From IMG/VR virus record IMGVR_UViG_3300034012_003212, positions 124,001-188,000 of that record: a stretch of DNA of 64,000 bases; one strand, 5' to 3'. Shown one piece after another: positions 37,770 to 63,179 of this stretch. The notes under the pieces are model-generated. The model was given only the letters and a program-made list of their open reading frames with translations. It ran no database searches and was not told the origin of the DNA. Position numbers and translations under genes: made by a program. Each line of letters begins with the position of its first letter. The first letter of the stretch is position 1.

Positions 37770-37770
37770 G

Positions 37771-41111: not shown

Positions 41112-41119
41112 AGGTACGT

Positions 41120-41903: not shown

Positions 41904-42116
41904 ATGGATAGAAATATTTTAATGGATAAAATCAGAGATGCATTTGAGACTTCATCTGAAGATGTGAAATGTGTAGAATGCGATAGTCTTCACTTTGTTG
42001 CCAGAATTCGCCTCAGGAGATTGAGTCCAATAACGAGCCCAACTGGACAGGAAATCATACTACCTCAGGAAATCTACGTGTGTTCGAAGTGTGGCACATC
42101 ACTACCCGAGGCATGA
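41904..42116 (+). CDS. Small Zn-ribbon protein
   Basis: CVEC...SPTGQE...CSKCG. Confidence 0.65.
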   Translation: MDRNILMDKIRDAFETSSEDVKCVECDSLHFVARIRLRRLSPITSPTGQEIILPQEIYVCSKCGTSLPEA

Positions 42117-42150
42117 TTTTTTAGCCTAGCATTTTGATATATACTTGAAT

Positions 42151-42654: not shown

Positions 42655-42738
42655 TGTTTTCATACTAGAAATTCTTTTCTTATTTTAGATCGGAATCTGA
42701 GGATTCCTTAACATTTTTGTTAAAAATAAGGAAAACAT

Positions 42739-43212: not shown

Positions 43213-43218
43213 CAGCAT

Positions 43219-43728: not shown

Positions 43729-43778
43729 AGTTTTCTCGATAAAAGTAACAACGAATGCATAGTATTATATAATATGGC

Positions 43779-44363
43779 ATGGTGAAGGTTTACTGCACAT
43801 TTATCAAAAACGGCGTCTATACGAAGGAATGGGTGTATAAACTTCGTGACAGGATATCAAGGAATTCTACGGTTCCCTTTGAATTTATATGCCTAACAAA
43901 TGAGAAATTGCTGGGAATAGATACAATAGCCATAAAAAATGTCGACGAACAATGGGCCAAAATTGAATTATGCAACCCATCGATAGATGGAAGGATCCAT
44001 CACATTGGTCTGGATTCTTTCATCATAGGAAATATAGACTTCTTCCTAAGAGAAGAAGAGTCGCTTCTATCATATGATTCCACCGAAGAAACCATCAAGA
44101 GCTCCTCAATATTCATCCTCAATGAGCACGAGAGATCACTCGTGTGGAATTCTGCGTGTAAATTTCATGAATGCATTGATGTATATGCAGATTGTCTGGA
44201 CGGTAAGTTGAGGACTATTCAAGAGAAACATCCAGGAAAAATTCAACGCTGCAAGTCCCCGGATGATGTGCTACTGTTTGGAACGAAGATACTGAATTTT
44301 TCAGGAGAAGCAAGACCTTCTGACTTTAAGGATAAACACTGGCTTAAAACATACTACTGGTAA
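43779..44363 (+). CDS. GT8-like glycosyltransferase (degenerate)
   Basis: FICLTN, WAKIEL, GLDSFIIGNID (DxD altered) and FSGEARP. Confidence 0.55.
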   Translation: MVKVYCTFIKNGVYTKEWVYKLRDRISRNSTVPFEFICLTNEKLLGIDTIAIKNVDEQWAKIELCNPSIDGRIHHIGLDSFIIGNIDFFLREEESLLSYDSTEETIKSSSIFILNEHERSLVWNSACKFHECIDVYADCLDGKLRTIQEKHPGKIQRCKSPDDVLLFGTKILNFSGEARPSDFKDKHWLKTYYW

Positions 44364-44364
44364 A

Positions 44365-45114
44365 ATGGCACTTTGGTTCTACGATAAAGATAGGTGGAAG
44401 ACCATAAACATGCACAAGAAGGAAAACAACCTAACCGCATTCATATGCGGAGGCGGACCTTCGCTGTCTTTGGTGGACCCCCTTGTTCTTCAAGGAAAGA
44501 ATAGATTGATCGTGGGAATGAATAATACGTACCCGTTTATACAGCCGGACATATGGGTTGGAATGGATATTCCAGAATGTTACGATTCCTCTTTGTTCTG
44601 GGAACCCTTTCCTAAAATTATGAGGGGGAATTATGGTTCAAGGATTCACCGAGGGTATGAAGTCAGAAACCTCAACTCTATGTATTTTGCTGATGTTGTC
44701 GAGGGAAAATCCGATGAAACCTTCTTTGACATGACGGAAGACATGAAATTTTCATGGAAGAAAAACACCCTCGCATTTGCCCTTCAATTTACTCTGTGGT
44801 TAGGTGTAAAAAACATACGCCTCGTGGGAGTAGACCTAGACAATTCAAAGAAGGATTATCATGATGGGACGTATTTATCAGATGCTCAACGGGCATCTAA
44901 TTCATTGTTGTATGATCAACTCTTTCCATTTTTGAAATGGTTCAATGTAGAATCACAGAAGAGAGGAATAAATGTTGCATCATGCTCCCATAATTCCAGA
45001 ATAAATGAAATATTCCCATACATCCATTACATGGATGCGATAAAATACCTTGAAATAGATGTTCCAAGGGGAAGACTAAAAACCCATGTTCTCGAAAAGG
45101 ATGAAAATGAATAA
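44365..45114 (+). CDS. DUF115/Maf-like (sialyltransferase-fold) glycosyltransferase
   Basis: ICGGGPSL, GMNN, PDIWVGMD and LGVKNIRLVGVD motifs. Confidence 0.7.
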   Translation: MALWFYDKDRWKTINMHKKENNLTAFICGGGPSLSLVDPLVLQGKNRLIVGMNNTYPFIQPDIWVGMDIPECYDSSLFWEPFPKIMRGNYGSRIHRGYEVRNLNSMYFADVVEGKSDETFFDMTEDMKFSWKKNTLAFALQFTLWLGVKNIRLVGVDLDNSKKDYHDGTYLSDAQRASNSLLYDQLFPFLKWFNVESQKRGINVASCSHNSRINEIFPYIHYMDAIKYLEIDVPRGRLKTHVLEKDENE

Positions 45115-45775
45115 AAATCTAAACGCATTTTTTGATCGAATATACTGCATAAATCTCGACAAACGAAAGGATCGATGGGAAAAATCAAGCGATCTGTTCA
45201 ATGAATATAGCATTGATGTAACAAGGGTTTCTGGAATAGAAGATCCGACTCTTCCCTGGGATGGCCTCAGGAGAACGATAATCGGTGTATTTGATACTGC
45301 CATAAAAGAGGGGCTCAATCGAATCCTTATATTAGAGGATGACATCGATTGGACCAATGATTCTATTTCAGGATTCGATCCATGCAAGAATTCCCTTCCT
45401 GATGATTGGGATATGTTCTATTTCAGCGCCGCCCATCAATTCTGGCCAGTAAAACACAATAATCACTTGTTTAAACTTTCATGGTCTACTGCAGCTCATG
45501 CCATAGGATTTAATTCAAAGTGTTTTTCGTTTATCAGGGAATCATTACAAGATAATAAAAAAGCTATAGATGTGACATACTCCGATTTGCAGAAAAAATT
45601 AAATGCGTACTGTGCGATAGATCCCATCGCATGGCAGAGGAGAGATTACAGTGACATAGAGCACCAGGAAAAATGGTACCCGTATCTCAAGAACTTGAAC
45701 TTTTACGAAGAATATATGTATAATAAAGTGACTGTTGACGGAAGGGATACTATCACTGGCGAACAGAAATTTTAA
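45086..45775 (+). CDS. GT25-family glycosyltransferase
   Basis: YCINLDKRKDR, ILEDD and DWDMFY motifs. Confidence 0.85.
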   Translation: MFSKRMKMNKNLNAFFDRIYCINLDKRKDRWEKSSDLFNEYSIDVTRVSGIEDPTLPWDGLRRTIIGVFDTAIKEGLNRILILEDDIDWTNDSISGFDPCKNSLPDDWDMFYFSAAHQFWPVKHNNHLFKLSWSTAAHAIGFNSKCFSFIRESLQDNKKAIDVTYSDLQKKLNAYCAIDPIAWQRRDYSDIEHQEKWYPYLKNLNFYEEYMYNKVTVDGRDTITGEQKF

Positions 45776-45786
45776 AGGCATTTGCA

Positions 45787-46740
45787 ATGAAAATTCTTCT
45801 AACAGGCGGAGCTGGTTTCATAGGAAGCCACATAGCAGAGATGTATTGTTCACATGGTTTTGACGTCGTAGTGGTCGATGACCTCTCGACTGGAAAACTT
45901 GCAAATCTTGCATTTGATTCCAGCCACCATCTGAAATTTGTGCATGAAGATATAAGGGACCCCGAAGCGATGGAACGGGTGTTCGATGAATACGGGCCTT
46001 TCGATATCGTGAACCACCAGGCGGCACATGTGTCCGTATCTGAATCAATGAAGTCCCCGGTTCATGACATAGAAACTAATATCATAGGGACATTGAATGT
46101 TCTTTCGATAGCGAGAGGTTGCTCTAAATTCATATTCTCTTCATCCGGGGGAACAGTATATGGAATGCACACAACCCCGAGGGATGAGAGTCATCCAACG
46201 GAACCATTATCCATCTATGGCGTTTCGAAACTTGCATGCGAAAAATTGGTAAAGTTGAAGGCAGGGGAGATGAATTTCTCTTATGCTATACTCAGGTACG
46301 CTAACGTATATGGCCCAAAACAAACACCGCACGGAGAGGCTGGAGTAGTCTCTATATTTCTCGAAAAGATGTTATCCGACCAAGTGTGCACACTCTACAG
46401 CGGAGGTCAGTGCAGTAGGGATTACATCTACGTGACAGACGTCGTTAAAGCCAATGAAATATGCACGCTAACACCGGGAGCAAATGGAATATATAACGTC
46501 TCGACAGGTAAGACTATAAGGACAAAAGAGGTGTATTCGTTTCTTTCAGAAAAACTTATAGAAAAATCTATTGTTGATAGCACGAAAAAGGAATTAGCTC
46601 CTGATAGAGCGGGAGATATTCCATACTCGTGTTGCATACCTGGTTGCATACCCAGCTGGAAACCGGAAGTTGATTTTGAAAGAGGTCTTGATAATTTGCT
46701 GGCGTACGCAAACTGTAAGGAGGATGTATGCGTGAAATAG
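45787..46740 (+). CDS. NAD-dependent epimerase (UDP-glucose 4-epimerase-like)
   Basis: TGGAGFIG, YGVSK, RYANVYGP and RDYIYV motifs. Confidence 0.93.
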   Translation: MKILLTGGAGFIGSHIAEMYCSHGFDVVVVDDLSTGKLANLAFDSSHHLKFVHEDIRDPEAMERVFDEYGPFDIVNHQAAHVSVSESMKSPVHDIETNIIGTLNVLSIARGCSKFIFSSSGGTVYGMHTTPRDESHPTEPLSIYGVSKLACEKLVKLKAGEMNFSYAILRYANVYGPKQTPHGEAGVVSIFLEKMLSDQVCTLYSGGQCSRDYIYVTDVVKANEICTLTPGANGIYNVSTGKTIRTKEVYSFLSEKLIEKSIVDSTKKELAPDRAGDIPYSCCIPGCIPSWKPEVDFERGLDNLLAYANCKEDVCVK

Positions 46741-47009
46741 TGCTTGTCGCGGAAGAAAATAACCGCAAGGAGGCCGAGATGATAGAAAACAGAAAGGTGA
46801 TTGCTTTGTCTGAGAAATTCAATATAGACAAAGATGCACTGAAGAACATATCGTTCGAAGATTGGTCACGTGGATACATCTGCGTAATATCAAAATCAAG
46901 AATCGAACAGATGGATTCAAATGATCATATAGTACATCAGTATGGAGAGGTTAGTAATAATCATTACTACTTTGTCAAGAATGAGGCAATTTTCAATAAG
47001 GATGAATAA
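46728..47009 (+). CDS. Hypothetical protein
   Basis: 93-aa ORF with AGGAGG upstream. Confidence 0.55.
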   Translation: MREIVLVAEENNRKEAEMIENRKVIALSEKFNIDKDALKNISFEDWSRGYICVISKSRIEQMDSNDHIVHQYGEVSNNHYYFVKNEAIFNKDE

Positions 47010-47299
47010 TGGGTAGCACAAAAAGCGCAGAAAAAATAATATTCTTGAAGTCAAATTCACCCGGGCCTTATGATATACCCATGAATGTTGTCGACGAGAA
47101 CGAAACAAGATACCTCTTTGAAATTGAGATCGACGATGCTTTCCATAGTTTTCCGATACTCAAAGAGGATATAGTCAGTAGTATATCCCTTCCGAGTGAA
47201 GATAGCACTATAATGGTGGAACTGAAGAAGGAAGCAATGGAAGTACTATATCGAGACATAGTGAGTATGGTTCGTTCCAATAATAACGATATATTCTGA
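47009..47299 (+). CDS. Hypothetical protein
   Basis: 96-aa ORF coupled to its neighbours. Confidence 0.55.
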   Translation: MGSTKSAEKIIFLKSNSPGPYDIPMNVVDENETRYLFEIEIDDAFHSFPILKEDIVSSISLPSEDSTIMVELKKEAMEVLYRDIVSMVRSNNNDIF

Positions 47300-48009
47300 T
47301 GAATCTCAACAATTACTTTGATCATATCTATTGCTTGAATCTCCCGGAATGCAAAGAAAGAGCAGCGGATACTCAGAAGAGGTGTGATGATTTCGGTATA
47401 TCCTTCTCATTTTTTCCTGCCATATCTGGAAAGTTGTTCTCAGACATACATTCCGGCTATTCTGGCGCACGAAGCACAAGGGTGTCTAACCCTAATTACA
47501 TGGCATGTGCATTGGGTCACCTGTCAATATACAGACACGCTCTGAGCAATTCATACGATAGGATACTTGTCATAGAGGACGACCTTTTGTTCAACCGTAA
47601 CATGGATTCCATTTTGGTTTCTGCAAAAGACGAGATACCCGACCAGTGGGACCTATTATATCTTGCATTCATACCGCTGACCGATGATCTCATGTTCTGG
47701 AATTACGGGATAATCGATGACAGATTCATCGGAGATAAGGTGTTTAGAGCAAAGAACCTGTGGTCGGCAATGGCGTATGGAATATCGGCCGACACTATGA
47801 GATGGATGGTTGATAGGTTCAACGGTTCTTTTGACAAGGAACTCGATCGTGTATTCGTTGAAGAGGTCCAGCCTAGGGGGAATTCTTTTGCTGTGTGCCC
47901 CCAGATTTTTGCAGGATACGATAATATGTCGAACAACTCTGAGCGTTTTGACACGATATTCGTAAAGAGCTTCGATTCCCGCAGGGCAAGGCCCGAGGAT
48001 TATGTTTAA
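47299..48009 (+). CDS. GT25-family glycosyltransferase
   Basis: YCLNL, CALGH, IEDD and WDLLYL motifs. Confidence 0.85.
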   Translation: MNLNNYFDHIYCLNLPECKERAADTQKRCDDFGISFSFFPAISGKLFSDIHSGYSGARSTRVSNPNYMACALGHLSIYRHALSNSYDRILVIEDDLLFNRNMDSILVSAKDEIPDQWDLLYLAFIPLTDDLMFWNYGIIDDRFIGDKVFRAKNLWSAMAYGISADTMRWMVDRFNGSFDKELDRVFVEEVQPRGNSFAVCPQIFAGYDNMSNNSERFDTIFVKSFDSRRARPEDYV

Positions 48010-48567: not shown

Positions 48568-49047
48568 TTAGAGAATCGGGCACTGGAAGTTATTCGTTCC
48601 AGTGAACTCAGCACACGCAAGATCATACATGCGTTTTGACATTTCTGGATCATTTACCGTCTTCCACTTTGCAGTATCAGCTCCCTGTGCAGCAAAGCTA
48701 GCTTCAAGTTCTAATTTATTTTTAGAGACCATGTAGTCTACTGCTGAATCCATCCATGATTTGAAACTGCTCATCTGTGACTGAGATAGTTCTCCTTGTT
48801 TTTGGGTGAACTCATCCAGATCTTTCATAACCTCATCCTTCTTTTTCTCCATTTCGGCGTAGATACGAGAACGCTCATCTGCGCTCTTCGCTTCCTTTAG
48901 AAGTTTTGTGTAAGACAGTTCTATATCCACCAACTTCTTTGCCTGGGTTTTTACCATCGTAACAGAAGAATCAACGATCTTTTTGAAATCGTCTACTGTC
49001 ATCTCGGACTCAAATATGAAATCCTTGAATTTTTTTACAAATGCCAT
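48568..49047 (-). CDS. Helical protein with capsid-targeting-like N-terminus
   Basis: Starts MAFVKKFKDFIFES. Confidence 0.65.
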   Translation of the reverse strand: MAFVKKFKDFIFESEMTVDDFKKIVDSSVTMVKTQAKKLVDIELSYTKLLKEAKSADERSRIYAEMEKKKDEVMKDLDEFTQKQGELSQSQMSSFKSWMDSAVDYMVSKNKLELEASFAAQGADTAKWKTVNDPEMSKRMYDLACAEFTGTNNFQCPIL

Positions 49048-49060
49048 AGTCTAATTTTTT

Positions 49061-49432
49061 TTAGTCTTCGTCTTCTCCCATGTCCTCATCATCTTCATCG
49101 TGGCGATGATGTTTCTTGGAATGATGCTTTTCTTCCTCATCTTCATCATCATCTTCTCCCCTTTCTTCATCATAGCTCTCTTCGCCTTCTTCTGACTCAC
49201 CCTCTTCTTCGTCTTCATCAATCTCGATAACTTCTTTTGCCTTCATTACAAGGTCTTCAACCTTTTCCATGAATGCATCATGCAATTCCTCTGGATCTGC
49301 ATCTTCGTCATCGTTATCTTTCCATTCGTTCCATGCATTCACCAGTTCTTCAAGCATCTCATAGAGATCTTTGTGGCTCACAACCTCTTCGGTTTCTTCT
49401 GTCCACTCTTCAAAAATTTGTACGTACTTCAT
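49061..49432 (-). CDS. Highly acidic protein with capsid-targeting-like N-terminus
   Basis: Starts MKYVQIFEEWTEE; D/E-rich; GATATATAC at 49449-49457. Confidence 0.65.
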   Translation of the reverse strand: MKYVQIFEEWTEETEEVVSHKDLYEMLEELVNAWNEWKDNDDEDADPEELHDAFMEKVEDLVMKAKEVIEIDEDEEEGESEEGEESYDEERGEDDDEDEEEKHHSKKHHRHDEDDEDMGEDED

Positions 49433-50661: not shown

Positions 50662-50925
50662 CTACTTTTTTTCTGATAGGCTCTGCATGAGTTCGTCGGT
50701 TATCTTTCCGTCGCACTTCATCCCATTATCTGCCTGATACGCAAGAATGGCAGACCTCACAATATCATCGTACAGATCAATCTCGCTCTGGTCCGGATTC
50801 GACGGTCCTGTTTCAAGATATCCTAGATCCACTAAAGATGATTTTACTTTCTTCATAATCTCATCAGATGTGGCTTCAGGTTTTTTGGAATCCTTTACAT
50901 ATTGTGCAAACTTCTTGACTTTCAT
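50662..50925 (-). CDS. Peptidoglycan-binding domain protein with capsid-targeting-like N-terminus
   Basis: Starts MKVKKFAQYVKDS; LVDLGY...AILAYQADNGMKCDG. Confidence 0.7.
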   Translation of the reverse strand: MKVKKFAQYVKDSKKPEATSDEIMKKVKSSLVDLGYLETGPSNPDQSEIDLYDDIVRSAILAYQADNGMKCDGKITDELMQSLSEKK

Positions 50926-51035: not shown

Positions 51036-51533
51036 TTACCACTCGGATCCACCGATGAAACGATTAGCTGCGTTTCGGCCTTCGATGTGTGTCTGCATTG
51101 CTTCTTCTACGCCAATACATTCTGCCAACATCTCTCGCCAATTGGGCCAGATGCTTTCATCGATGAAGCTAAGATCGCAACCGGTGAAATTTGTCCCCTT
51201 TCCGTACCTAGAAAGATAGAATGAAGGGATATTATCTGTTCCCGGCTGTGTTGCGTCTAATCCCTTACAGTAGGAAAAATCAGCACCGGAGAAATCACAA
51301 CCTTCCATTTTAACATTGGTGAAATCAGAACCGGAGAATTTTGCGTTTACAAAAGGACCGCTAAGTTCAGCACCATCAAGTATAGCACCTTCGATCTCCG
51401 TAACAAAGTCCGGGCCGAAGTATGTTTCCATGATTTCTTCCTTTGTCATAGCCTTTACCGGGGGTGTTGTTTCTCCCATTTCATTTTCGTTCATGCGGAT
51501 GAATGAACTGAAAGTTTTTACGTGTTTTGCCAT
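51036..51533 (-). CDS. Pentapeptide-repeat protein with capsid-targeting-like N-terminus
   Basis: Starts MAKHVKTFSSFIRMNEN; AKFSG SDFTN CDFSG ADFSY repeats. Confidence 0.7.
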   Translation of the reverse strand: MAKHVKTFSSFIRMNENEMGETTPPVKAMTKEEIMETYFGPDFVTEIEGAILDGAELSGPFVNAKFSGSDFTNVKMEGCDFSGADFSYCKGLDATQPGTDNIPSFYLSRYGKGTNFTGCDLSFIDESIWPNWREMLAECIGVEEAMQTHIEGRNAANRFIGGSEW

Positions 51534-51591: not shown

Positions 51592-53643
51592 TTATGCTAA
51601 AACCCTCGGAACATTAACAACCTTAGATCCAGCGCCTGGTAAAAAGTTCTGAAAAGATGCATTGTCCCAAACAACCCATATAGTATTTCTAATCCACGAT
51701 CTGTATCTCTTATTACTACATTCTGTCTGGTCTCCTATGTAACCATCGGTAAAAATAAACACGAGATCTGCCTTTTTGAATTTTTCATCTATGAAATCCA
51801 TCGTAGGAGCAAAATCAGTGCCACCTCCTCCTTGTACCTTTGAATCAAGCTTTTTGAAGAAATTGTATCTCGAAAAGTTCGATTTGTTATCAAATTCAAC
51901 CACACTTTCAGTATAAACCCCGCTATCCCAACAGAAAACCGTAACCTTAGATGTTATTTTCTTCGATTCTAGAATAGCAGATAGCTCTCTCATCAAATCA
52001 TGGACAATTCCAACCATAGAACCAGATGTGTCCAATGCCACTACAATATGATCAAGGTTTTTACGATCAGGTACGATCTGAGATCTAACCATCCTGGAAT
52101 TTCCTAAGAATTTCTTGTTAGGTATCCTAGATCTTTCATCGGATATTGCATTTCCTATGTATCGTGCTAATTTTTTCCTCCAATCTATATCAGTTTCAGC
52201 TTTTCTCCTATTAAGAAGGTCTATACACATATTAATGAAGCTTATGCCTCCCATTCCCCGTCCAGCCTTCCTGGTAGATGTTTTTGACCTCTGGCCTATC
52301 TCAACAGCTTCTCTGGCTATTTTTTCCCAATCGGATTTGTCTTTTATTTGCTCATTCGGTATTTCTCCTAAAATTTTACAAAGTGCGTTTCCTTCTTCTT
52401 GCGATATTACTTCGCCAGGCGCAAAAATCTTAATTGGAATAGGTTTACGCTTATCGTTAAGCTTAGATTTTGGTTTTCCTTGGCCACCAGGGGTTCCTTC
52501 AGTTCCAGGGGTTCCTTCAGTTCCAGGGGTTCCTTCAGTTCCAGGGGTTCCTTCAGTTCCAGGGGTTCCTTCAGTTCCAGGGGTTCCTTCAGTTCCAGGG
52601 GTTCCTCCTTCTCCATCTCCTTCTCCATCTGGTTCTTCGTGATCCCCGCTACTTAAACAATACCACCCAGTATCTTCATCATTACCACCAAAAACGATTG
52701 TCTCGCTTAACGTGCTGTGTTCAGCAGACACAGTTTTTTCGAACGAATTAAATGTGAGCAGCGCATCGCGATGTTCTTTAATCTCTTTGGTCTTTTTGCG
52801 ATTAGCCACCGGGTTTACTGCCGTACTACTAGATGAACCTGATATCCAAGAATTGTCAATCTTCGGGATTTCCATCTGGAGTTCTTTTACTTTAGGGTAT
52901 ATTTCTTCAGCAGGAGCATCGCCAAATTTATCACTATACCATCCTATGCCTAGCCATTCATCTTTAATGTAATCGCTTTCGGTCATTCCTAGTGCTTCTG
53001 CCACCCTTACGTTTATCTCTATGTCTGTTGCGATATTCCACTTGTGGCTATCCCTGCCGCCCATGCGCAAAAAGTGTTCCTGTATGCAATGGTACAACTC
53101 ATGGATGAGGATGAATGCTGATGTCCTCTTGGGCATGCCATAAAAGAACAGAGGACATATGAATATGTGTCTTCCATCAGTGGCCGCAGTTCTTATCCCT
53201 TCATTGTAACCATAGATCATCTTCATCTTAAGAAATGCAGGCGCAAGGGGAAACAACTCCGGTTGTCTCGATATGAGTAGGATCGTGTCCTGTACATCAT
53301 TTTCCACTGAATCCTTAATTTGCTGGAGTTCTTGTTTTGTGAATATACTGAACAGCATGACACCTATTCCCTTGAATGATCTCATTATATCACACCTTTC
53401 TTCAAGGGAATACTTCTTTATCGTCTCAGCATGATTTACCTGTATCCACCTGGCATTATTTTCATCAACACCGTCCTGCAGGATACACCCCTTTTTCTTC
53501 ATGTCGTCTATTAAAAGGCCCACTTTCTGGGCCTTTTCCTTCAGTATAGAAGGATCTATGGATTCATTTACGGCCTGGGATTCAAGAACACTTCGGTTCT
53601 TGAGAAAATCGCTATAATTGAATATGGAACGAATTTTTGACAT
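51592..53643 (-). CDS. DUF2201-type metallopeptidase plus vWA domain protein
   Basis: TAATDG, HELYH (HExxH), WNIATD, DTSGS MIDAS, GGGGTDF and FTDG motifs. Confidence 0.9.
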   Translation of the reverse strand: MSKIRSIFNYSDFLKNRSVLESQAVNESIDPSILKEKAQKVGLLIDDMKKKGCILQDGVDENNARWIQVNHAETIKKYSLEERCDIMRSFKGIGVMLFSIFTKQELQQIKDSVENDVQDTILLISRQPELFPLAPAFLKMKMIYGYNEGIRTAATDGRHIFICPLFFYGMPKRTSAFILIHELYHCIQEHFLRMGGRDSHKWNIATDIEINVRVAEALGMTESDYIKDEWLGIGWYSDKFGDAPAEEIYPKVKELQMEIPKIDNSWISGSSSSTAVNPVANRKKTKEIKEHRDALLTFNSFEKTVSAEHSTLSETIVFGGNDEDTGWYCLSSGDHEEPDGEGDGEGGTPGTEGTPGTEGTPGTEGTPGTEGTPGTEGTPGTEGTPGGQGKPKSKLNDKRKPIPIKIFAPGEVISQEEGNALCKILGEIPNEQIKDKSDWEKIAREAVEIGQRSKTSTRKAGRGMGGISFINMCIDLLNRRKAETDIDWRKKLARYIGNAISDERSRIPNKKFLGNSRMVRSQIVPDRKNLDHIVVALDTSGSMVGIVHDLMRELSAILESKKITSKVTVFCWDSGVYTESVVEFDNKSNFSRYNFFKKLDSKVQGGGGTDFAPTMDFIDEKFKKADLVFIFTDGYIGDQTECSNKRYRSWIRNTIWVVWDNASFQNFLPGAGSKVVNVPRVLA
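52487..52606. repeat. 18-bp tandem repeat (GTPGTE)n in the vWA-protein linker
   Basis: CCAGGGGTTCCTTCAGTT x6 plus a partial copy, perfect. Confidence 0.95.
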
Positions 53644-53665
53644 ATCTCTTTGTGTAGCGTAATTT

Positions 53666-55408
53666 TTACTTAACGTATACTGCAGTATCGCGTTGTACGA
53701 TTATAGCCGTCTTGTTATCGAATATGTCAGAATACTTCTTTGTCAATTTTTCGATGTATTCATCCAGTACAGGTTTATATACCTTCACGTCGTACGTTGC
53801 TCCGCCTCTGAGGCTAAGCTCAGGGTGCTGTTTCAGGAAGTCGAGTGCAAGGCACACAGTTGATGTCTTATCGCCTATGTTAAGGATGTATGTCAAGAAG
53901 TTCTTGATTTCCTGCGGCGTACAAACTTTACCCAATTTCATGCGAAGTATTGAAACCCTGTAAGCAAATCTCAGCGCATTGATATCGTATTTTTCAAATT
54001 CAGACTCAGAAGGATTGATGGATCCTGTGTCCATGGTCTTCTCGTCGTTTTCTCCCTTTTTCTTTGGCCAAGGAGCAGCATTTTTGGGATCTGTATACAC
54101 CTTCTCGAGGGATTGCGTATCAACTATGCTCATCAATTTAATGAACGCAACGTATTCGGATGCTATTTCAGTTCCGAGTTGCATCGCAATAATATCCTCT
54201 ACTTCGGTCATTTTCAATTTCCTTCCGAGGCGAACGGCTCTTCTGTGCAATTCGCGTGCTGCACTCTCCCATCCGCGGGGATCTGCTTCCACTGTGTTCT
54301 CTGCATCAGGGTCCATCCTGTGCCAGAACTGAGGATTGAGGTTGAGGAAGTCGAGCATCTCTTCAGGGAAGAACTTTTCCAGTTCTTTTGTCTTCGGATT
54401 ATATGCAGTGTTCTGCTTTTGATACTCTGCCCAGTTTTCCATCGTCGGAACAAAGTTAAAGTGCCTGAACCTCGCCTTTTGAGCAGGTGAGCGAAGTATA
54501 TCCATCGGGGTATCAGGTTCATCCTGAGGCCTGTTGGAAGCAGCGACAATGATCCATTTCGGAGCGAGCCTAAAATTCTCAAACACCCTCTCGGATGCCA
54601 AATTCATTATCGCAGTGATGGAACTCTTCGGTGCGCGGCTGATCTCGTCAAAGAATATGATACCACCGCCGCCACAGTTCGCTTTCTTTATTGCTTCTTT
54701 TCTCGCCTCGCCCGTCAGCGTATCATCGAACAGAGGCAGTGACGACAGAGGAACAAGCTGCTGTTTAGTTGTTCCGAACTCGTCCTGACCTATCGTCGGG
54801 AGCATGAACAAATCTTTATCGATGATGTTCAGGTTGCAATAACGTGCTCCCATGCCTGCTTCTTTTGTCTTCCAGTTAACTATACCAGTCTTTCCTATAC
54901 CAGGAGCTCCCCATACGAGCAAGGGCTTGGGATACTGCGAATAAGGAAGTTCTTCTGTTTCATCAAGGCTCTTGACGAATTCAATCATCGCATCGAGCTC
55001 TTCCTTGAAGAACTCAGGCCCTTTGTTCGGAAGAGATGGGTCTATTGATTCAAATTTTATGTATGCTTCTGTGATCGCAACGGGATTCTCATTGGGCTCC
55101 TCTGTTGGGACTTCGGGTTCCTGCACGGGTGATTCATCAGAAGCTGCATTGATGATGCTCTTCTCAACTTCTCCTGGGTATATCGTCAACCCTTTGATCT
55201 CCCCGTTCTGTACTTGCATGTATTTGTTCAGGACCCATGAGTTCGGGCCTTCGAATTTATCCCCCAGCCAACGAAGTCCAGGGATCTTGCTCATCGCGCG
55301 GCGGAGTGCTTCTCCTATCTTCGAGACAGCGTCCTTGAAGAATCCTTCGTTGAGGTTCTTGGATTCACTTATGAAATCCGAATATCTTTTTACGTGGTAA
55401 CGTTTCAT
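53666..55408 (-). CDS. MoxR-like AAA+ ATPase
   Basis: WGAPGIGKT, FFDEISRA, AASNRP, ARFRH and DPRGWE motifs; paired with the vWA gene; GATATATAG at 55424-55432. Confidence 0.9.
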   Translation of the reverse strand: MKRYHVKRYSDFISESKNLNEGFFKDAVSKIGEALRRAMSKIPGLRWLGDKFEGPNSWVLNKYMQVQNGEIKGLTIYPGEVEKSIINAASDESPVQEPEVPTEEPNENPVAITEAYIKFESIDPSLPNKGPEFFKEELDAMIEFVKSLDETEELPYSQYPKPLLVWGAPGIGKTGIVNWKTKEAGMGARYCNLNIIDKDLFMLPTIGQDEFGTTKQQLVPLSSLPLFDDTLTGEARKEAIKKANCGGGGIIFFDEISRAPKSSITAIMNLASERVFENFRLAPKWIIVAASNRPQDEPDTPMDILRSPAQKARFRHFNFVPTMENWAEYQKQNTAYNPKTKELEKFFPEEMLDFLNLNPQFWHRMDPDAENTVEADPRGWESAARELHRRAVRLGRKLKMTEVEDIIAMQLGTEIASEYVAFIKLMSIVDTQSLEKVYTDPKNAAPWPKKKGENDEKTMDTGSINPSESEFEKYDINALRFAYRVSILRMKLGKVCTPQEIKNFLTYILNIGDKTSTVCLALDFLKQHPELSLRGGATYDVKVYKPVLDEYIEKLTKKYSDIFDNKTAIIVQRDTAVYVK

Positions 55409-55464
55409 GCGTATTATTTTTTTCTATATATCATTTGTTTTGGGAAAAAAACGGAGCAATACAG

Positions 55465-59135: not shown

Positions 59136-59540
59136 TCACTCCTGGGAGCTTCGAGCGAATGTGACGTATTCCCCTGCTATCCCTATGAGCCCGTCCAGCG
59201 AAAGTTTAACGTCAGAAGACCTGTCCAGGAACTCGTCAAGTTCACGATGCATCCCAGAGGACTCGAGAGCGTTCATGACGCCCAGTATTATGGCCGCTTT
59301 GGAATTGTAGAATTCCCCTGAGGGGTTCATCACGTCTGCGCTTGGTTTGTTCATTTCTGCCTCCTGGTGTTCTTCTTTGTTCACGTAAGGTTCCGGCGTT
59401 TCCAGAACCATCCAGGCCTGCCCTGGGAGCACATTGTAGTAGTACGTCATGACTAGCATGTTCCTCGACCATGTCCAGACGAGGTCGCACCACGGAGCGT
59501 CTTCCCTCGACGGAGGTCTGTCGGTTATCCACTCACTCAT
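59136..59540 (-). CDS. MSEWITDR-family (DUF551-like) protein fused to an unrelated C-terminal domain
   Basis: Family N-terminus and PEPYV linker. Confidence 0.7.
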   Translation of the reverse strand: MSEWITDRPPSREDAPWCDLVWTWSRNMLVMTYYYNVLPGQAWMVLETPEPYVNKEEHQEAEMNKPSADVMNPSGEFYNSKAAIILGVMNALESSGMHRELDEFLDRSSDVKLSLDGLIGIAGEYVTFARSSQE

Positions 59541-59913
59541 TGTTCAGCTCCTTATGATAGTTGAGTAAAAGTTTACGCACACGGCGTGCGGCTTCGATGG
59601 CCTGTTCTGAGGTTTGAAAGCAGTTGCCGAAGTTGTATTGTTTATCATCAATTTCCAAAAAACTATACCGCCAAAGTACTCCTCCGGTATAATCTATTTC
59701 CCAGTAATACTGATTGGGGGAAGGTTTCCACCGCTTAGGCTCTGAATTTCCGCCTGGCGCGGTCTTGTTTCTTCTAATCCAAGGATTTCCTAAACAAAGA
59801 TCGGAGTAAAAAATATCGTATACATATGATTCTTCGTCAATTGTCCAAACCATTCCATCATCATCCGCATCCGCCTCCGTCGGCAGCCTGTCGGTTATCC
59901 ACTCACTCATCAT
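59533..59913 (-). CDS. MSEWITDRLP-family protein (two-domain form)
   Basis: WKP...GNCFQT.EQA.EAARRVR.LLLNYHKEL C-terminus. Confidence 0.75.
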   Translation of the reverse strand: MMSEWITDRLPTEADADDDGMVWTIDEESYVYDIFYSDLCLGNPWIRRNKTAPGGNSEPKRWKPSPNQYYWEIDYTGGVLWRYSFLEIDDKQYNFGNCFQTSEQAIEAARRVRKLLLNYHKELNNE

Positions 59914-59923
59914 CGCCTCCTTG

Positions 59924-60379
59924 TTAAAACTGTGTTGAACTATTTATTATTGCATTGTTCAAGTTTGCACCACTCAAGTCTGCATAAATCAAGTATGCGC
60001 CACTCAAGTTTGCACCACTCAAGTTTGCACCACTCAAGTCTGCACTGACCAAGTCTGCACCACACAAGTCTGCACCATCCAAGTCTGCACTGACCAAGTC
60101 TGCGCCACTCAAGTTTGCACCACTCAAGTCTGCGCCATCCAAGTCTGCACCACACAAGTCTGCACCACACAAGTCTGCACCTCTCAAGTCTGCACCTCTC
60201 AAGTCTGCACCTCTCAAGTTTGCACCTCTCAAGTCTGCACTGACCAAGTCTGCACCTCTCAAGTCTGCACCACACAAGTTTGCACCTCTCAAGTCTGCAC
60301 CATCCAAGTCTGCACTGACCAAAGTATCTGTGTCAACTGTGTGGATTACTGTACCAAGCGTGTTCTTTATCTCAATCAT
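59924..60379 (-). CDS. Pentapeptide-repeat protein
   Basis: Over 20 A(D/N)Lxx repeats encoded by 15-bp DNA repeats. Confidence 0.92.
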   Translation of the reverse strand: MIEIKNTLGTVIHTVDTDTLVSADLDGADLRGANLCGADLRGADLVSADLRGANLRGADLRGADLRGADLCGADLCGADLDGADLSGANLSGADLVSADLDGADLCGADLVSADLSGANLSGANLSGAYLIYADLSGANLNNAIINSSTQF

Positions 60380-60391
60380 TGCAGTAGCTCC

Positions 60392-60610
60392 TTATGATAG
60401 TTGTGTAATGTCTCGCGCACACCGCTTCGGCTCTGGCTTGACGTATGGCTTCGGCGGAACGGGCTTTGGCTTTGGCGCCCAAACTTCGCCAGTCTGTATA
60501 TCCTCGTAATGACATCGCATTACCTCACCATTACTGCCTGCCAACCACACCTTATATTCCTCATCCGCATCTTCTTTCGTCGGCAGCCTGTCGGTTATCC
60601 ACTCACTCAT
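60392..60610 (-). pseudogene. MSEWITDRLP-family protein with an internal out-of-frame deletion
   Basis: EPKR is joined directly to DNA encoding VRETLHNYHKELLQ in another frame. Confidence 0.6.
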
Positions 60611-60980
60611 TGTTCAGCTCCTTGTGATAGTTTAACAATGTCTCACGCACACGTTGTGCGGCTTCTTCGGCTTGGGCTTGGGTTTGAAAGCAGTTGCCGA
60701 AGCTGTATTTTTCTTCATTAATTTCTGTGGGCAAAAAGCATTTGCACACTTCTCCATTGGTATTCACCATCCAATGATGTTCATACGGGAGAGGCCTCCA
60801 CCTCTGCGGCTCTGGCTTAACGTATGGCGCGGGTGTTTGCATCGGCATCCATGGCATCCGAATTAGCACGCGGGTATAGTGTATACTTATAACAGTGCCG
60901 TCATTACACGACGCCCATACATATCCTGAATTGCCTGCGTCCGCTTCGTTTGGATGTCTATCTGTTATCCATTTGGCCAT
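60603..60980 (-). CDS. MSEWITDRLP-family protein (two-domain form)
   Basis: MAKWITDRHP...LLNYHKELNNE. Confidence 0.75.
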   Translation of the reverse strand: MAKWITDRHPNEADAGNSGYVWASCNDGTVISIHYTRVLIRMPWMPMQTPAPYVKPEPQRWRPLPYEHHWMVNTNGEVCKCFLPTEINEEKYSFGNCFQTQAQAEEAAQRVRETLLNYHKELNNE

Positions 60981-61350
60981 TTAACAACTCCTTGTGATAG
61001 TTGAGTAAAAGTTCATGAATGCGACGTGCAGCTTCTTCTGCTTGTTCTAAGTTTTGAAAAACATTGCCGAAGTCGTATGCTCTACGAGCATCTTGGCCGC
61101 CATAATAATTCGTATTGAGCGTCTCGCCGAACCAGCTGATGTAATAGTACAAACTTTCAACCTCAGGCTTCCACCTCTGCGGCTCTGGCCTGACGTATGG
61201 CTTTGGCGGTGATATTTCCATCCAGGGCATGCCAAGTTTAATTTCTGAACGTCTTCTTAAACATGGCGTGCCTTTTTTTACCTGAGACCACACAAGACCT
61301 GAAAATCCCTCTTCGTATTCAGGCAGCCTGTCGGTTATCCACTCAATCAT
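60958..61350 (-). CDS. MSEWITDRLP-family protein (two-domain form)
   Basis: MIEWITDRLP; GGAGG upstream. Confidence 0.75.
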   Translation of the reverse strand: MIEWITDRLPEYEEGFSGLVWSQVKKGTPCLRRRSEIKLGMPWMEISPPKPYVRPEPQRWKPEVESLYYYISWFGETLNTNYYGGQDARRAYDFGNVFQNLEQAEEAARRIHELLLNYHKELLNGQMDNR

Positions 61351-61582
61351 TGTACCTCCGTGATACATTATTTGCATAATATGAAAAAGAGCCTGGGTCT
61401 ATGCCATCGCGAGACGGTACGTATGGATCGGGTTCATCGATAATCATCCATGGCTGACCCTCGTAAACACATGTAAAATGAGTTTGCTCCACCGTACCTT
61501 CGTTAGTTGTTACCCAAACAGTAGTGCCTGTATATTTTATTTCATCTTGATTTGGCAGCCTGTCGGTTATCCACTCACTCAT
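61343..61582 (-). CDS. MSEWITDRLP-family protein (single-domain form)
   Basis: Family N-terminus and PDPYV linker. Confidence 0.7.
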   Translation of the reverse strand: MSEWITDRLPNQDEIKYTGTTVWVTTNEGTVEQTHFTCVYEGQPWMIIDEPDPYVPSRDGIDPGSFSYYANNVSRRYND

Positions 61583-61660
61583 TTGTTTCTCTCCATATTT
61601 TTTAAGACGTAAATTATTGATGCAAATACACATATAATGAATACTGATACGACATCATGT

Positions 61661-62044
61661 TCATTCAGCATTATTTAACTCCTTATGATAGTTGAGTAAA
61701 AGTTCACGCACGCGGCGTGCTGCTTCCTGGGCTTGGGCCTCTGTTTGAAAGCAGTTTCGACTGTGGTAATAACTCATATCGGAGTTATTACCTGTCCATT
61801 GTAACAGTATCACCCCGGTGTGTTCCACTGCCCAATAACTCTGATCAGTCTTAGGCTTCCACGGATCTGGTTCTACACTGGGTTTGATGTAAGCATCAGG
61901 CTCTTTTATTGGCATCCAAGGCTGATTTACTTCCACTGTAGTGTAGTCTGCCCAGTAAACAAACCCATTTTCCGTTATCCACACTTTCTTGAGTATGTCA
62001 CTGTCCCGATCCGTCGGAAGTCGGTTGGTTATCCACTCACTCAT
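61661..62044 (-). CDS. MSEWITNRLP-family protein (two-domain form)
   Basis: AGGAGG upstream; conserved C-terminal block. Confidence 0.75.
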   Translation of the reverse strand: MSEWITNRLPTDRDSDILKKVWITENGFVYWADYTTVEVNQPWMPIKEPDAYIKPSVEPDPWKPKTDQSYWAVEHTGVILLQWTGNNSDMSYYHSRNCFQTEAQAQEAARRVRELLLNYHKELNNAE

Positions 62045-62273
62045 CTGTTTTCCCTCCTGGATTGTCGCGACTTCCAAATTTCAGCTCATGTAACTCGTGG
62101 TATATTTTAGCGTGTCGTTCGAATAAATGTATGGCAGTATTTAGCATCTCTCTGAGGTACAACTCATTCATAATATCAAGGTCGTGAGAATATGATCTGG
62201 CCTCAATCATGATGGCCTGTACATGTTCCATCACGGCGATCGAGAACGAAGGTTTATTCTGAGTCATGATCAA
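62037..62273 (-). CDS. Hypothetical protein
   Basis: 78-aa ORF coupled to its neighbours. Confidence 0.55.
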   Translation of the reverse strand: MIMTQNKPSFSIAVMEHVQAIMIEARSYSHDLDIMNELYLREMLNTAIHLFERHAKIYHELHELKFGSRDNPGGKTDE

Positions 62274-62424
62274 ACTCCATTATTTTAAAAATGATGAACA
62301 CGATGAACTTCCCTATCCAGTATAGCCCACATGTGATTCCAGCAATTCTGAAAAAATGCATGAAATCACTGGACACTTCCCATGCGATCGATGCCATGAG
62401 CACACCCATCAATATGTACATTAT
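62254..62424 (-). CDS. Small two-TM membrane protein
   Basis: MYILMGVLMASIAW...GLYWIGKFIVFIIF; start uncertain. Confidence 0.45.
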   Translation of the reverse strand: MMYILMGVLMASIAWEVSSDFMHFFRIAGITCGLYWIGKFIVFIIFKIMEFDHDSE

Positions 62425-62533
62425 GGTGTAGTGTATCGCTTGATCCGTTCCTCTCGTACGGGCCTTGCTATTCCGCGCATGACGCCTCCAAAAAATTAGT
62501 GTGAAACGTTGAACTGTTGCGATCTGTCTTGTG

Positions 62534-62541
62534 CAAAAATA
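62534..62541 (-). promoter_or_regulatory. Bacteroidota-type -7 promoter TATTTTTG
   Basis: TAnnTTTG followed by CA, with AT tracts upstream; heads the paralogue array. Confidence 0.55.
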
Positions 62542-62661
62542 CAAAAAAAACGTGAAAGTTTTCAATTTTTTTATTTTTTGGAAAAAAAATATCCGCACGG
62601 AAGATCAGGCCAGTAGCTCCTTTTTGTAGTTGGAGCGCAGTTCACGAATTCTGTGCCTGGC

Positions 62662-62877
62662 TTATTCTGCGTGATCCTCAAACCACTCGATCCCGCAGAA
62701 GTAGATTTCCCCATCTTCTGCCAGAAAATGGGTTATCCCGTGTGACCAAGATGGGTAGTGAACTTTCATGAGTTCATGATCCTCTCCGTTTATTGGCGTC
62801 ACATCCCCGAAATCTTTCAGGTGGAATTTCCTGTTCTGGAGATACTTCGGAGTTGGACCTTTGTGCCATTTTTCCAT
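62662..62877 (-). CDS. Hypothetical protein
   Basis: 71-aa ORF. Confidence 0.55.
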   Translation of the reverse strand: MEKWHKGPTPKYLQNRKFHLKDFGDVTPINGEDHELMKVHYPSWSHGITHFLAEDGEIYFCGIEWFEDHAE

Positions 62878-62895
62878 GATTCTAAAGTATTTGTG

Positions 62896-63174
62896 TTACA
62901 ACCGTCCTTTGACCTTCCACCCATATTGGAGGTTAAACATTCTCACGGCTTCTTTGCTCTTGTACTTTGGCTCTCGGAAAGTCTTGGAATATGAATCAAT
63001 CATCCACTCCATGAAAGACCTTTCTTCCTCTAGTGTCCACTCTCGGAGCGCGTACCACTTGTCCTGCTCAGTGAACGCAGGGTCATAGCCGCTGAACCCC
63101 ACACGGCGGAACATCTCGTCGAGGGCTATTTTGCGGAAGTCTTCGATCTTCTTCTTTACATCGAGTGTGCTCAT
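62896..63174 (-). CDS. Hypothetical protein
   Basis: Likely start MSTLDVK; W-rich small phage protein. Confidence 0.55.
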   Translation of the reverse strand: MSTLDVKKKIEDFRKIALDEMFRRVGFSGYDPAFTEQDKWYALREWTLEEERSFMEWMIDSYSKTFREPKYKSKEAVRMFNLQYGWKVKGRL

Positions 63175-63179
63175 ATAGT

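What the first reader, a model, noticed from the sequence alone, without database searches (positions are those of the whole stretch)
51592..55408. MoxR AAA+/metallopeptidase-vWA pair apparently built for encapsidation
Seen: both partners have N-terminal extensions bearing the tag and repeated xxE-[SGA] sites (VLES, VNES, ISES, LNEG, ITEA), sit behind GATATATAG, and the peptidase linker has a perfect (GTPGTE)6 repeat. Known: MoxR-vWA pairs are chaperone/remodelling systems, usually cytoplasmic. Inference: a virion-delivered unfoldase-protease acting on host defence proteins, or a head-maturation machine.
Basis: partly seen in the sequence, partly recalled or inferred. Interest (0 to 1): 0.62.

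Follow-up and report, generated by a model that had tools for sequence, protein, structure and literature searches.

The report
Capsid-tagged MoxR ATPase and VWA-peptidase pair
A 260-kb lake-water phage makes a two-protein ATP-driven chaperone/protease module as precursors whose N-termini look like phage T4's capsid address label with prohead-protease cut sites, so the module is probably packed into the head and injected with the DNA, though no virion has been examined.

Summary
The pair is a MoxR-class AAA+ ATPase (53666-55408, minus strand) followed by a zinc-metallopeptidase/VWA fusion (51592-53643, minus strand). This module was already described in jumbo phages (Iyer et al. 2021).

What is new here:
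- **N-termini.** Both precursors start with an aromatic-x-x-aromatic-(I/L/V)-x-E tag. These positions match the residues mapped genetically in T4's capsid targeting sequence.
- **Cut sites.** The tag is followed by conserved (L/I/V)-x-E sites.
- **Matching machinery.** The genome encodes a T4-type prohead protease and a gp23-type capsid protein. The capsid protein's own propeptide carries the same LNE-S motif.
- **Conservation.** In 55 distinct homologues from viral contigs, the E before the AAA+ core is kept in 54 and the tag in nearly all. Homologues from cultured phages (N4-like, Asteriusvirus, S-TIM5) lack the extension.
- **Co-regulation.** GATATATAG-like motifs precede the tail sheath, portal, adaptor and protease/capsid genes, and also 9 of 14 tagged genes.

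Encapsidation is therefore well supported by comparison, but it is not proven. What the pair does once delivered remains inference. "Unfoldase" overstates it. The neighbouring tagged proteins look like host-interaction cargo, which favours ejection over head maturation. I rate it a new variant of known kinds.

The parts
55424..55432 (-). GATATATAG promoter-like motif, 15-16 nt upstream of the AAA+ start codon. It serves the two-gene operon.
   Evidence: With up to 1 mismatch, 30 of 101 genome hits lie within 60 nt upstream of ORFs, a space that is 4% of the genome. The genes behind it include the tail sheath, portal, head-tail adaptor and prohead protease-scaffold.
53666..55408 (-). Gene for the MoxR-class AAA+ ATPase precursor (580 aa)
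   Evidence: Foldseek best matches are NorQ (9qh8, 9qh4) and CbbQ2 (6l1q). Natural variants are 17 synonymous to 5 non-synonymous.
55364..55408 (-). N-terminal tag, residues 1-15 (Y9, F12, I13, E15), a candidate capsid targeting sequence ending in ISE|S
   Evidence: Searches give the T4 internal-protein N-termini. One search gives the mapped T4 determinants (residues 4, 7, 8 and 10). Searches show the tag in homologues.
55343..55354 (-). LNE|G candidate prohead-protease site (residues 19-22)
   Evidence: In the 55-sequence alignment E is present in 45. At those sites P3 is L/V/M/I in 42, P2 is N in 40 and P1' is G or A in 39.
55064..55075 (-). ITE|A candidate maturation site (residues 112-115), in a low-confidence linker just before the AAA+ core
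   Evidence: E is present in 54 of 55 homologues, with P3 L/I/V/M in 48. pLDDT is below 50 for residues 89-121.
54887..54910 (-). Walker A motif, GAPGIGKT (residues 167-174)
   Evidence: Invariant in alignment A1; coordinates.
54644..54661 (-). Walker B motif, IIFFDE (residues 250-255)
51592..53643 (-). Gene for the metallopeptidase-linker-VWA precursor (683 aa)
   Evidence: alignment A2; structure model.
53560..53643 (-). N-terminal tag (Y10, F13, L14) with VLE|S and VNE|S candidate cut sites (residues 1-28)
   Evidence: Orthologues carry an equivalent tag followed by (V/L)NE. pLDDT is below 50 for residues 1-29.
53074..53103 (-). Zinc-binding motif HExxHxxxxH (H181, E182, H185, H190)
   Evidence: Invariant in 21 sequences.
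52432..52863 (-). Disordered low-complexity linker (residues 261-404) between the peptidase and the VWA part
   Evidence: pLDDT is below 50 for residues 261-404. Relatives have linkers of other compositions (GQ, GPS, GE) at the same place.
52487..52606 (-). Perfect 18-bp tandem repeat, 6.7 copies, encoding (GTPGTE)x6
51595..52056 (-). VWA domain with a complete MIDAS site (D538, S540, S542, T609, D633)
   Evidence: Invariant columns. Foldseek matches VWA/MIDAS folds, including the MDN1 MIDAS domain.
51036..51533 (-). Next gene downstream: a tagged pentapeptide-repeat protein with its own AATATATAC motif. It is a likely fellow cargo.
48568..49432 (-). Two further tagged small proteins (48568-49047 and 49061-49432) in the same minus-strand block
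   Evidence: Orthologues lie beside the pair in contig L004.

Best explanation
The operon encodes a phage MoxR-class AAA+ ATPase and its VWA(MIDAS) partner. The partner carries a zincin-type metallopeptidase on a long flexible linker. Both proteins are made as precursors under the promoter type that drives the virion structural genes.

Proposed sequence of events:
1. An N-terminal T4-type capsid targeting sequence brings each precursor into the prohead scaffolding core.
2. The T4-type (S77) prohead protease cuts after (L/I/V)-x-E. This removes up to 114 residues from the ATPase and about 21-27 residues from the peptidase-VWA protein.
3. The mature proteins stay in the DNA-filled head, together with other tagged cargo (pentapeptide-repeat, peptidoglycan-binding and PRTase-domain proteins; ankyrin and LRR proteins in relatives).
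4. They are ejected into the host with the DNA.
5. In the host the ATPase hexamer engages the VWA domain, as NorQ engages NorD. It uses ATP to act through the linker on a MIDAS-bound target that the tethered peptidase cleaves, giving the phage this activity before any phage gene is expressed.

Shown here: domains, catalytic motifs, tag, conserved sites, matching protease and capsid genes, and the shared upstream motif. Inferred: packaging, cleavage, ejection, interaction of the two proteins, and the target.
For: **Tag matches the T4 determinants.**
- T4 IPII and IPIII start MKTYQEFIAE|A and IPI starts MKTFKEF.
- In T4, targeting maps to residues 4 and 7 and processing to residues 8 and 10 (PMC9026906).
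- The same aromatic/aromatic/aliphatic/Glu spacing is found in both window proteins.

**Matching head machinery.**
- The genome has Peptidase_S77 and Gp23.
- T4 gp23's LTE|A cut falls in the same N-terminal (propeptide) stretch as MNE-S and LNE-S in this capsid protein; the alignment there is gapped.
- [LIVM]NE[SGA] occurs 34 times against 13.8 +/- 3.4 in shuffles, with 3 copies each in the capsid protein and the protease-scaffold.

**Conservation across relatives.**
- All 14 metagenomic homologues at 25-57% identity keep the extension, with N20, E21 and E114 invariant.
- Of 55 distinct viral-contig homologues, 54 keep E114, with hydrophobic P3 in 48.
- Partner peptidases carry the tag too. 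The 462-kb phage LR756500 is one example.
- Four of 5 large related contigs encode S77.

**Contrast with untagged homologues.** They have no extension and group apart in a quick tree.

**Co-regulation with structural genes.**
- ATATATA[GC] lies within 50 nt upstream of 9 of 14 tagged genes, against 15 of 334 others (Fisher p = 1e-8).
- Those 15 others include the sheath, portal and adaptor genes.

**Accessible cut sites.** The candidate cut regions are predicted to be flexible.

**MoxR-VWA analogy.** NorQ and CbbQ are the top fold matches. The NorQ-NorD mechanism is described in PMC13036017.

**Nature of neighbouring cargo.** The other tagged proteins resemble host-interaction proteins.
Against: - There is no proteomic, cleavage or transcript-timing evidence. 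The phage is uncultivated and no RNA run holds this DNA.
- Conserved (L/I/V)-x-E could be structural rather than a cut site.
- The AAA+ extension (about 114 aa, with three or four predicted helices) is far longer than a 10-residue CTS. It may have its own function and be retained.
- A hexameric ATPase must reassemble after ejection.
- The "late" label for the promoter motif rests only on the genes behind it.
- The complex prediction gave no verdict.
- In N4-like phages and contig L008 the pair sits among replication genes. This shows the module can work in the cytoplasm without packaging.
Confidence: 0.55

Rival explanations
1. Head-assembly or maturation machine. The tags bring the pair into the prohead, where the chaperone/peptidase helps build, remodel or clear the very large scaffolding core. 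The pair has no role after ejection and is degraded or left behind. This extends the proposal of Iyer et al. 2021.
For: - Iyer et al. proposed a role in virion assembly plus peptidolytic processing of structural proteins for this pair (PMC7824862).
- The genome has an unusual protease-scaffold fusion with about 14 short repeats.
- The operon shares the structural-gene promoter motif.
Against: - Homologues in N4-like phages lie among early/middle replication genes and lack tags.
- Related jumbo phages with T4-type heads (Asteriusvirus) carry an untagged pair, and Tenacibaculum phage PTm1 shows no AAA+ match (no positive control). The pair therefore seems not to be needed to build such heads.
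- The other tagged proteins are pentapeptide, ankyrin, LRR and PRTase-type, not morphogenetic.
Confidence: 0.2
2. The N-terminal motif is not a packaging signal. It could be a shared leader with another role, such as translation efficiency, membrane or scaffold-independent localisation, or an autoinhibitory prodomain. On this view the pair acts in the cytoplasm of the producing cell, like its untagged relatives.
For: - The AAA+ extension is long and partly helical.
- No experimental link exists between this tag and capsids.
- The pair clearly functions untagged in other phages.
Against: - The tags are similar as protein, not as DNA: at most 62% identity over the first 48 nt. Neither a nucleotide-level leader nor a recent cassette copy explains them.
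- The conserved positions coincide with T4's mapped targeting and processing residues.
- The same NE-S/G motif occurs in the capsid propeptide and the protease.
- The tag occurs on unrelated protein families in several phages.
Confidence: 0.15
3. The pair is packaged but serves the DNA or the particle rather than the host. For example, it could act as a plug or an ejection aid, or condense or protect DNA inside the head, with the VWA/MIDAS domain binding a virion component.
For: - Many T4 internal proteins are thought to travel with the DNA (PMC3012670).
- A tagged peptidoglycan-binding protein lies nearby.
Against: - Intact ATPase and zinc-peptidase catalytic residues are invariant.
- ATP is not expected inside a sealed head.
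Confidence: 0.1

Closest known systems
MoxR AAA+ / metallopeptidase-vWA pair of group 2.2 jumbo phages (Iyer et al. 2021, PMC7824862); the same module in N4-like phages (the 'gp25-like' protein), rV5-like phages and cyanophage S-TIM5
   Same: - Same two-gene module and domain order: phrog_1297 plus phrog_1314, DUF2201_N plus VWA.
- Adjacent genes.
- Catalytic motifs kept.
   Different: - Those proteins start directly at the catalytic domains.
- Here both partners carry N-terminal propeptide-like extensions with a T4-type tag and (L/I/V)-x-E sites.
- Here the operon sits behind the structural-gene promoter motif.
T4 internal proteins IPI/IPII/IPIII and Alt (capsid targeting sequence, gp21 processing, ejection)
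   Same: - N-terminal aromatic-x-x-aromatic-aliphatic-x-Glu tag followed by a small residue.
- A T4-type protease and capsid protein in the same genome.
- A cluster of unrelated proteins sharing only the tag.
   Different: - T4's cargo is small basic proteins and an ADP-ribosyltransferase, whereas here it is a two-component ATPase/peptidase machine.
- The AAA+ has a second conserved site about 100 residues in, implying a long propeptide.
- No experimental evidence exists here.
Bacterial MoxR-VWA chaperone pairs (NorQ-NorD, CbbQ-CbbO, RavA-ViaA)
   Same: - AAA+ fold closest to NorQ and CbbQ.
- The partner has a complete MIDAS VWA domain joined by a linker to an N-terminal effector part.
   Different: - The effector part is a zinc peptidase rather than a target-binding domain for metal insertion.
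- The context is a phage, with capsid tags.
- Sequence similarity is below family-model cut-offs.
Ejection proteins of phiKZ/SPN3US-like giant phages processed by the prohead protease
   Same: Many head-internal enzymes are made as precursors and trimmed after Glu by a related protease. The protease here also matches Peptidase_S80.
   Different: - Those phages use an (A/S/G)-x-E motif (recalled from memory, not checked here) and have no T4-like N-terminal tag.
- Their cargo includes RNA polymerase subunits, not a MoxR/VWA pair.

Membership tests
MoxR-class AAA+ ATPase | Walker A, Walker B and conserved sensor/arginine residues of an active AAA+ | tested here: met
   GAPGIGKT at 167-174 and IIFFDE at 250-255. 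R258, N292, R293 and R313 are invariant in 15 sequences.
MoxR-class AAA+ ATPase | Fold closest to solved MoxR members | tested here: met
   Top Foldseek matches are NorQ (9qh8, 9qh4; TM by target 0.58) and CbbQ2 (6l1q). Model confidence is moderate: mean pLDDT 69, with the core at 80-93.
MoxR-class AAA+ ATPase | Curated sequence model (Pfam AAA_5 or NCBIfam) above its cut-off | tested here: not met
   AAA_5 scores 21.5 bits against a cut-off of 22. AAA scores 22.0 against 21.2, which is generic. NCBIfam gives nothing. So this is a divergent branch, and membership rests on fold and context.
MoxR-class AAA+ ATPase | Adjacent VWA-domain partner gene | tested here: met
   The partner is 22 nt downstream. 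The pair is conserved in L004, L005, L006 and L008 and in 27 distinct viral-contig partners.
MoxR-class AAA+ ATPase | Hexamer that binds the VWA partner | tested here: inconclusive
   The 1:1 complex prediction gave no verdict. A hexamer exceeds the tool's size limit.
Phage metallopeptidase-VWA protein (DUF2201_N + DUF2201/VWA; phrog_1314) | Pfam and PHROG models above threshold | tested here: met
   DUF2201_N scores 62.2 bits (cut-off 23.2), VWA_CoxE 31.7 (26.4) and DUF2201 29.7 (26.4). phrog_1314 matches at 1.9e-55.
Phage metallopeptidase-VWA protein (DUF2201_N + DUF2201/VWA; phrog_1314) | Zincin HExxH motif and a complete MIDAS site | tested here: met
   H181, E182, H185, H190, D538, S540, S542, T609 and D633 are invariant in 21 sequences. 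The VWA fold is confirmed. The peptidase fold was not matched separately.
T4-type capsid-targeted, protease-processed head cargo | N-terminal tag with the residues that T4 genetics maps for targeting (aromatics 3 apart) and processing (aliphatic-x-Glu) | tested here: met
   Enrichment at N-termini is shown.
T4-type capsid-targeted, protease-processed head cargo | Genome encodes the T4-type prohead protease and a gp23-type shell | tested here: met
   PF03420 scores 46.6 bits and PF07068 117.9 bits. Four of 5 large related contigs also encode PF03420.
T4-type capsid-targeted, protease-processed head cargo | Expressed with the head genes (late) | tested here: inconclusive
   The operon shares an upstream motif with the sheath, portal, adaptor and protease/capsid genes. 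No transcript data exist.
T4-type capsid-targeted, protease-processed head cargo | Physically present in virions in cleaved form and ejected | not testable with these tools
   The phage is uncultivated and known only from lake and freshwater metagenomes.

The most novel reading that the evidence does not exclude
A T4-like capsid address label is conserved from T4 to a large clade of uncultivated big and huge phages, with head genes most similar to those of Lak megaphages, a 462-kb metagenomic phage and Tenacibaculum phage PTm1. In that clade it marks a whole injected arsenal, including a pre-assembled-on-arrival, ATP-driven MoxR/VWA-peptidase machine. If so, the injected proteome of phages that have never been cultured could be read from sequence alone, and a chaperone-protease would join the list of proteins that phages deliver with their DNA.
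Probability: 0.45. Interest if true: 0.72.

Novelty: new variant of a known kind. Interest (0 to 1): 0.62.

Why it matters
- **Injected proteins decide the first minutes of infection.** Known examples, such as T4 IPI*, Alt and the N4 virion RNA polymerase, are few and come from cultured phages.
- **A portable sequence rule.** N-terminal tag, plus (L/I/V)-x-E, plus an S77 protease in the genome, plus the structural-gene promoter motif, would allow prediction of injected cargo in metagenomic huge phages. Here it nominates about 15 proteins in one genome, and ankyrin and LRR proteins in relatives.
- **A delivery-time hypothesis for an unexplained module.** The function of the widespread phage MoxR/metallopeptidase-VWA module is unknown. 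This finding suggests when it acts in this clade.
- **A possible tool.** If the tag works like T4's, it could be used to load proteins into large capsids.

Tried and rejected
- **Word-based homologue search with the peptidase-VWA protein.** It returned one weak hit, probably because the low-complexity repeat swamped the word candidates. Partners were instead recovered from the neighbourhoods of AAA+ homologues.
- **Complex prediction of AAA+ 120-580 with VWA 470-683.** No verdict (score 0.00). This is evidence neither for nor against binding.
- **Sequence search of the PDB.** It gave only generic Walker-A matches and collagen-like matches to the repeat.
- **NCBIfam.** Nothing useful.
- **Megablast of the locus against deposited phages.** No match.
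- **Tenacibaculum phage PTm1.** It is the nearest cultured relative by capsid protein, but no AAA+ match was found in it (the tool cautions that an empty answer without a positive control shows nothing). So no virion proteome could be borrowed.
- **Sequencing runs.** Only DNA runs hold the stretch, so expression timing and transcript starts could not be read.
- **Laying contigs.** Contigs break at the 18-bp repeat, so copy-number variation could not be assessed.
- **Sigma-70 promoter and terminator scans.** Not above shuffles.
- **Foldseek on the full peptidase-VWA model.** It returned only VWA matches, so the peptidase domain's nearest solved fold was not determined.
- **(GTPGTE)n as a string of protease sites.** I considered that GTE-G might fit a phiKZ-type G-x-E specificity. 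I do not adopt this, because linkers of relatives (GQ, GPS) lack Glu.
- **The two 'no-extension' viral-contig homologues (L061, L090).** They nest inside tagged clades in a quick tree. They may be losses or miscalled starts, and this was not resolved.
- **The large representative-protein search.** Not used, since the family scans and word search sufficed.

Full report
**What is there.**
- The window is bases 124001-188000 of a 260,658-bp linear IMG/VR virus record, about 88% complete and 41.6% G+C.
- Its DNA recurs in lake and freshwater metagenomes from several independent studies, 8 of them with runs holding 30% or more of the sampled words.
- On the minus strand, 53666-55408 encodes a 580-aa protein. 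Twenty-two nt downstream, 51592-53643 encodes a 683-aa protein.

**The 580-aa protein is an AAA+ ATPase.**
- It has Walker A GAPGIGKT (167-174) and Walker B IIFFDE (250-255).
- It matches phrog_1297 at 1.8e-27, but Pfam AAA_5 at 21.5 bits falls just under its 22-bit cut-off (AAA 22.0 just over its 21.2).
- An AlphaFold model built on 15 homologues has a confident core. Its best matches among solved structures are NorQ and CbbQ2, both MoxR ATPases that work with VWA partners.

**The 683-aa protein is a peptidase-VWA fusion.**
- It has a DUF2201_N zinc-peptidase domain, with HExxHxxxxH invariant in 21 sequences.
- A 144-residue disordered linker follows, then a helical segment and a VWA domain with a complete MIDAS site.
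- Natural variants in other lakes are mostly synonymous: 24 to 14 overall and 17 to 5 in the ATPase.

- The repeat is a perfect 18-bp unit in 6.7 copies.
- GATATATAG lies 15-16 nt before the first gene only, so the two genes form one unit behind it.

**What the tag is.**
- I read T4's internal-protein genes from its record. IPII and IPIII begin MKTYQEFIAE followed by A, and IPI begins MKTFKEF.
- A review of T4 head assembly states that the first 10 residues of IPIII suffice for capsid targeting. Targeting depends mainly on residues 4 and 7, and processing on residues 8 and 10 (PMC9026906).
- The window proteins have the same layout: Y9, F12, I13, E15 then S in the ATPase, and Y10, F13, L14 followed by VLE-S and VNE-S in the peptidase.
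- About 15 ORFs of this genome start this way.
- A strict T4-like pattern hits 4 N-termini and none of 74,361 internal residues.
- A weight matrix trained only on homologues from other contigs picks 7 N-termini, both partners included, where 0.45 are expected.
- The tags share little nucleotide identity (at most 62%), so they are not recent copies of one 5' cassette.

**The matching machinery is in the genome.**
- It encodes a T4-type prohead protease (Peptidase_S77, also matching S80) fused to a repeat-rich scaffold, and a gp23-type capsid protein.
- T4 gp23 is cut at LTE-A. The same N-terminal (propeptide) stretch of this capsid protein carries MNE-S and LNE-S, although the alignment there is gapped.
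- [LIVM]NE[SGA] occurs 34 times in the proteome against 13.8 +/- 3.4 in shuffles. Three copies each lie in the capsid protein and the protease-scaffold, and others lie in tagged proteins.

**Conservation.**
- All fourteen metagenomic homologues of the ATPase (25-57% identity) keep the extension. N20, E21 and E114 are invariant.
- A scan of viral contigs gave 55 distinct homologues with an extension (Walker A at residue 114-258), and nearly all start with the tag.
- E114 is kept in 54 of the 55, with L/I/V/M two residues before it in 48. E21 is kept in 45, with N before it in 40 and G or A after it in 39.
- E114 lies in a low-confidence stretch just before the AAA+ core.
- Partner peptidases in those contigs carry equivalent tags followed by (V/L/I)NE.
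- In the 462-kb phage LR756500 the peptidase starts MKYIKSYENFIFE. The next two genes, one an LRR protein, start MKYIQTYKDFL(L/I)E.
- In contig L004 the pair is preceded by tagged ankyrin-repeat proteins.
- Four of five large related contigs encode the S77 protease.
- By contrast, homologues in cultured phages have no extension. I checked three directly (N4-like Presley, Asteriusvirus JNE01, cyanophage S-TIM5), and matches in the other deposited phage records begin only at query residue 132 or later.
- In a quick tree with a midpoint root, those three untagged homologues from cultured phages fall outside the tagged group.

**Regulation.**
- With up to one mismatch, 30 of 101 genome-wide GATATATAG-like sites lie within 60 nt upstream of an ORF on the right strand. 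That space is 4% of the sequence.
- The genes behind the motif include the tail sheath, portal, head-tail adaptor and the protease-scaffold gene, with the capsid gene 14 nt behind it.
- ATATATA[GC] precedes 9 of 14 tagged genes against 15 of 334 others (p = 1e-8). Three of the five tagged genes without it follow closely (13-79 nt) behind another gene on the same strand; the other two have an upstream same-strand neighbour only in the wider ORF list or were not checked.
- There is no conserved upstream element, which resembles T4 late promoters. That comparison comes from my own knowledge of T4.
- Timing itself is untested.

**Mechanism.**
- The best-supported reading is that both proteins are capsid-targeted precursors, trimmed by the prohead protease and carried in the head.
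- I favour ejection and action in the newly infected cell over a role in head maturation, for two reasons. The other tagged proteins look like host-interaction proteins (pentapeptide repeat, peptidoglycan-binding, PRTase-domain, ankyrin, LRR). And related phages with T4-type heads either carry the pair untagged or show no AAA+ match.
- How the pair would then work is taken from NorQ-NorD. There a VWA finger enters the ATPase pore and the ATPase remodels the partner's linker (PMC13036017). Here that linker leads to a zinc peptidase.
- The target is unknown.

**Comparison and novelty.**
- The module itself was described by Iyer et al. 2021 in group 2.2 jumbo phages, with a proposed assembly role.
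- Capsid targeting sequences are classic T4 biology. The review notes that they may let T4-like phages load varied proteins.
- In the papers I could search, nothing links the two, and nothing describes such tags in Lak-related or other huge phages.
- I therefore rate this a new variant of known kinds.

**Limits.**
- All evidence is comparative.
- Gene calls outside the pair come from a simple longest-ATG ORF script.
- The tree is a quick search.
- The structure models are of moderate confidence.

Noticed in passing
window 10482-11678(+), 16206-16595(+), 21177-21884(+), 35148-35726(+), 35763-36404(+), 48568-49047(-), 49061-49432(-), 50662-50925(-), 51036-51533(-); G000:19842-20990, 191404-191844, 227396-228991, 231297-233537: Further ORFs start with the same T4-like tag. 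They include a pentapeptide-repeat protein, a small PG_binding_1 protein and a phosphoribosyltransferase-domain protein. Most have no family match. They are candidate head cargo.
   Followed up: partly
G000:86348-88222 (outside the window): The prohead protease (Peptidase_S77/S80) is fused to a long C-terminal part with about 14 copies of a short YSNYLAENLDK-like repeat, presumably the scaffold. The capsid gene follows 14 nt later. PTm1 annotates a similar fusion.
   Followed up: partly
G000:88318-89388 (outside the window): A 356-aa protein with a C-terminal phage lysozyme domain lies next to the protease gene. An exact GATATATAG sits 3-4 nt before its start codon. Its N-terminus is loosely tag-like.
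   Followed up: no
window 59136-63839 (-): At least eight tandem paralogues begin MSEWITDRLP, and a pentapeptide-like ORF lies among them. The two paralogues scanned had no Pfam match.
   Followed up: no
G000:197000-222000 (outside the window): About 60 tandem paralogues of 108-194 aa share a CSQEALDSFGSLEA-KVNGDL motif near the N-terminus. They are arranged in two opposed blocks. This is a very large gene-family expansion of unknown function.
   Followed up: no
G000:7600-19800 (outside the window): There is an array of about 30 short ORFs starting MNLENV, with TEF/HTE-rich ORFs on the opposite strand. This is repeat-structured DNA, and it is unclear which strand, if either, is coding.
   Followed up: no
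phrog_1314 and RefSeq records (e.g. L101 3999-5147, L019 2977-4182): The metallopeptidase-VWA family is labelled 'HNH endonuclease' in PHROGs and in several RefSeq phage records, and 'anti-sigma factor' in others. The domains found here do not support either name.
   Followed up: partly
window 36618-48009 (+): A block of sugar-related genes includes an NAD-dependent epimerase (45787-46740) and a family-25 glycosyltransferase (47299-48009). The same kinds of genes flank the pair in contig L004.
   Followed up: no
window 17265-18650 (+): The family-B DNA polymerase ORF covers the exonuclease domain and only the first third of the polymerase domain, so the polymerase may be split. A 390-aa DNA_pol_B ORF occurs in contig L008.
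   Followed up: no
L005 8552-10545 and the contig of P0011: In some relatives the peptidase and the VWA part are two separate genes, split at the low-complexity linker. The linker is therefore a natural break point of the fusion.
   Followed up: partly
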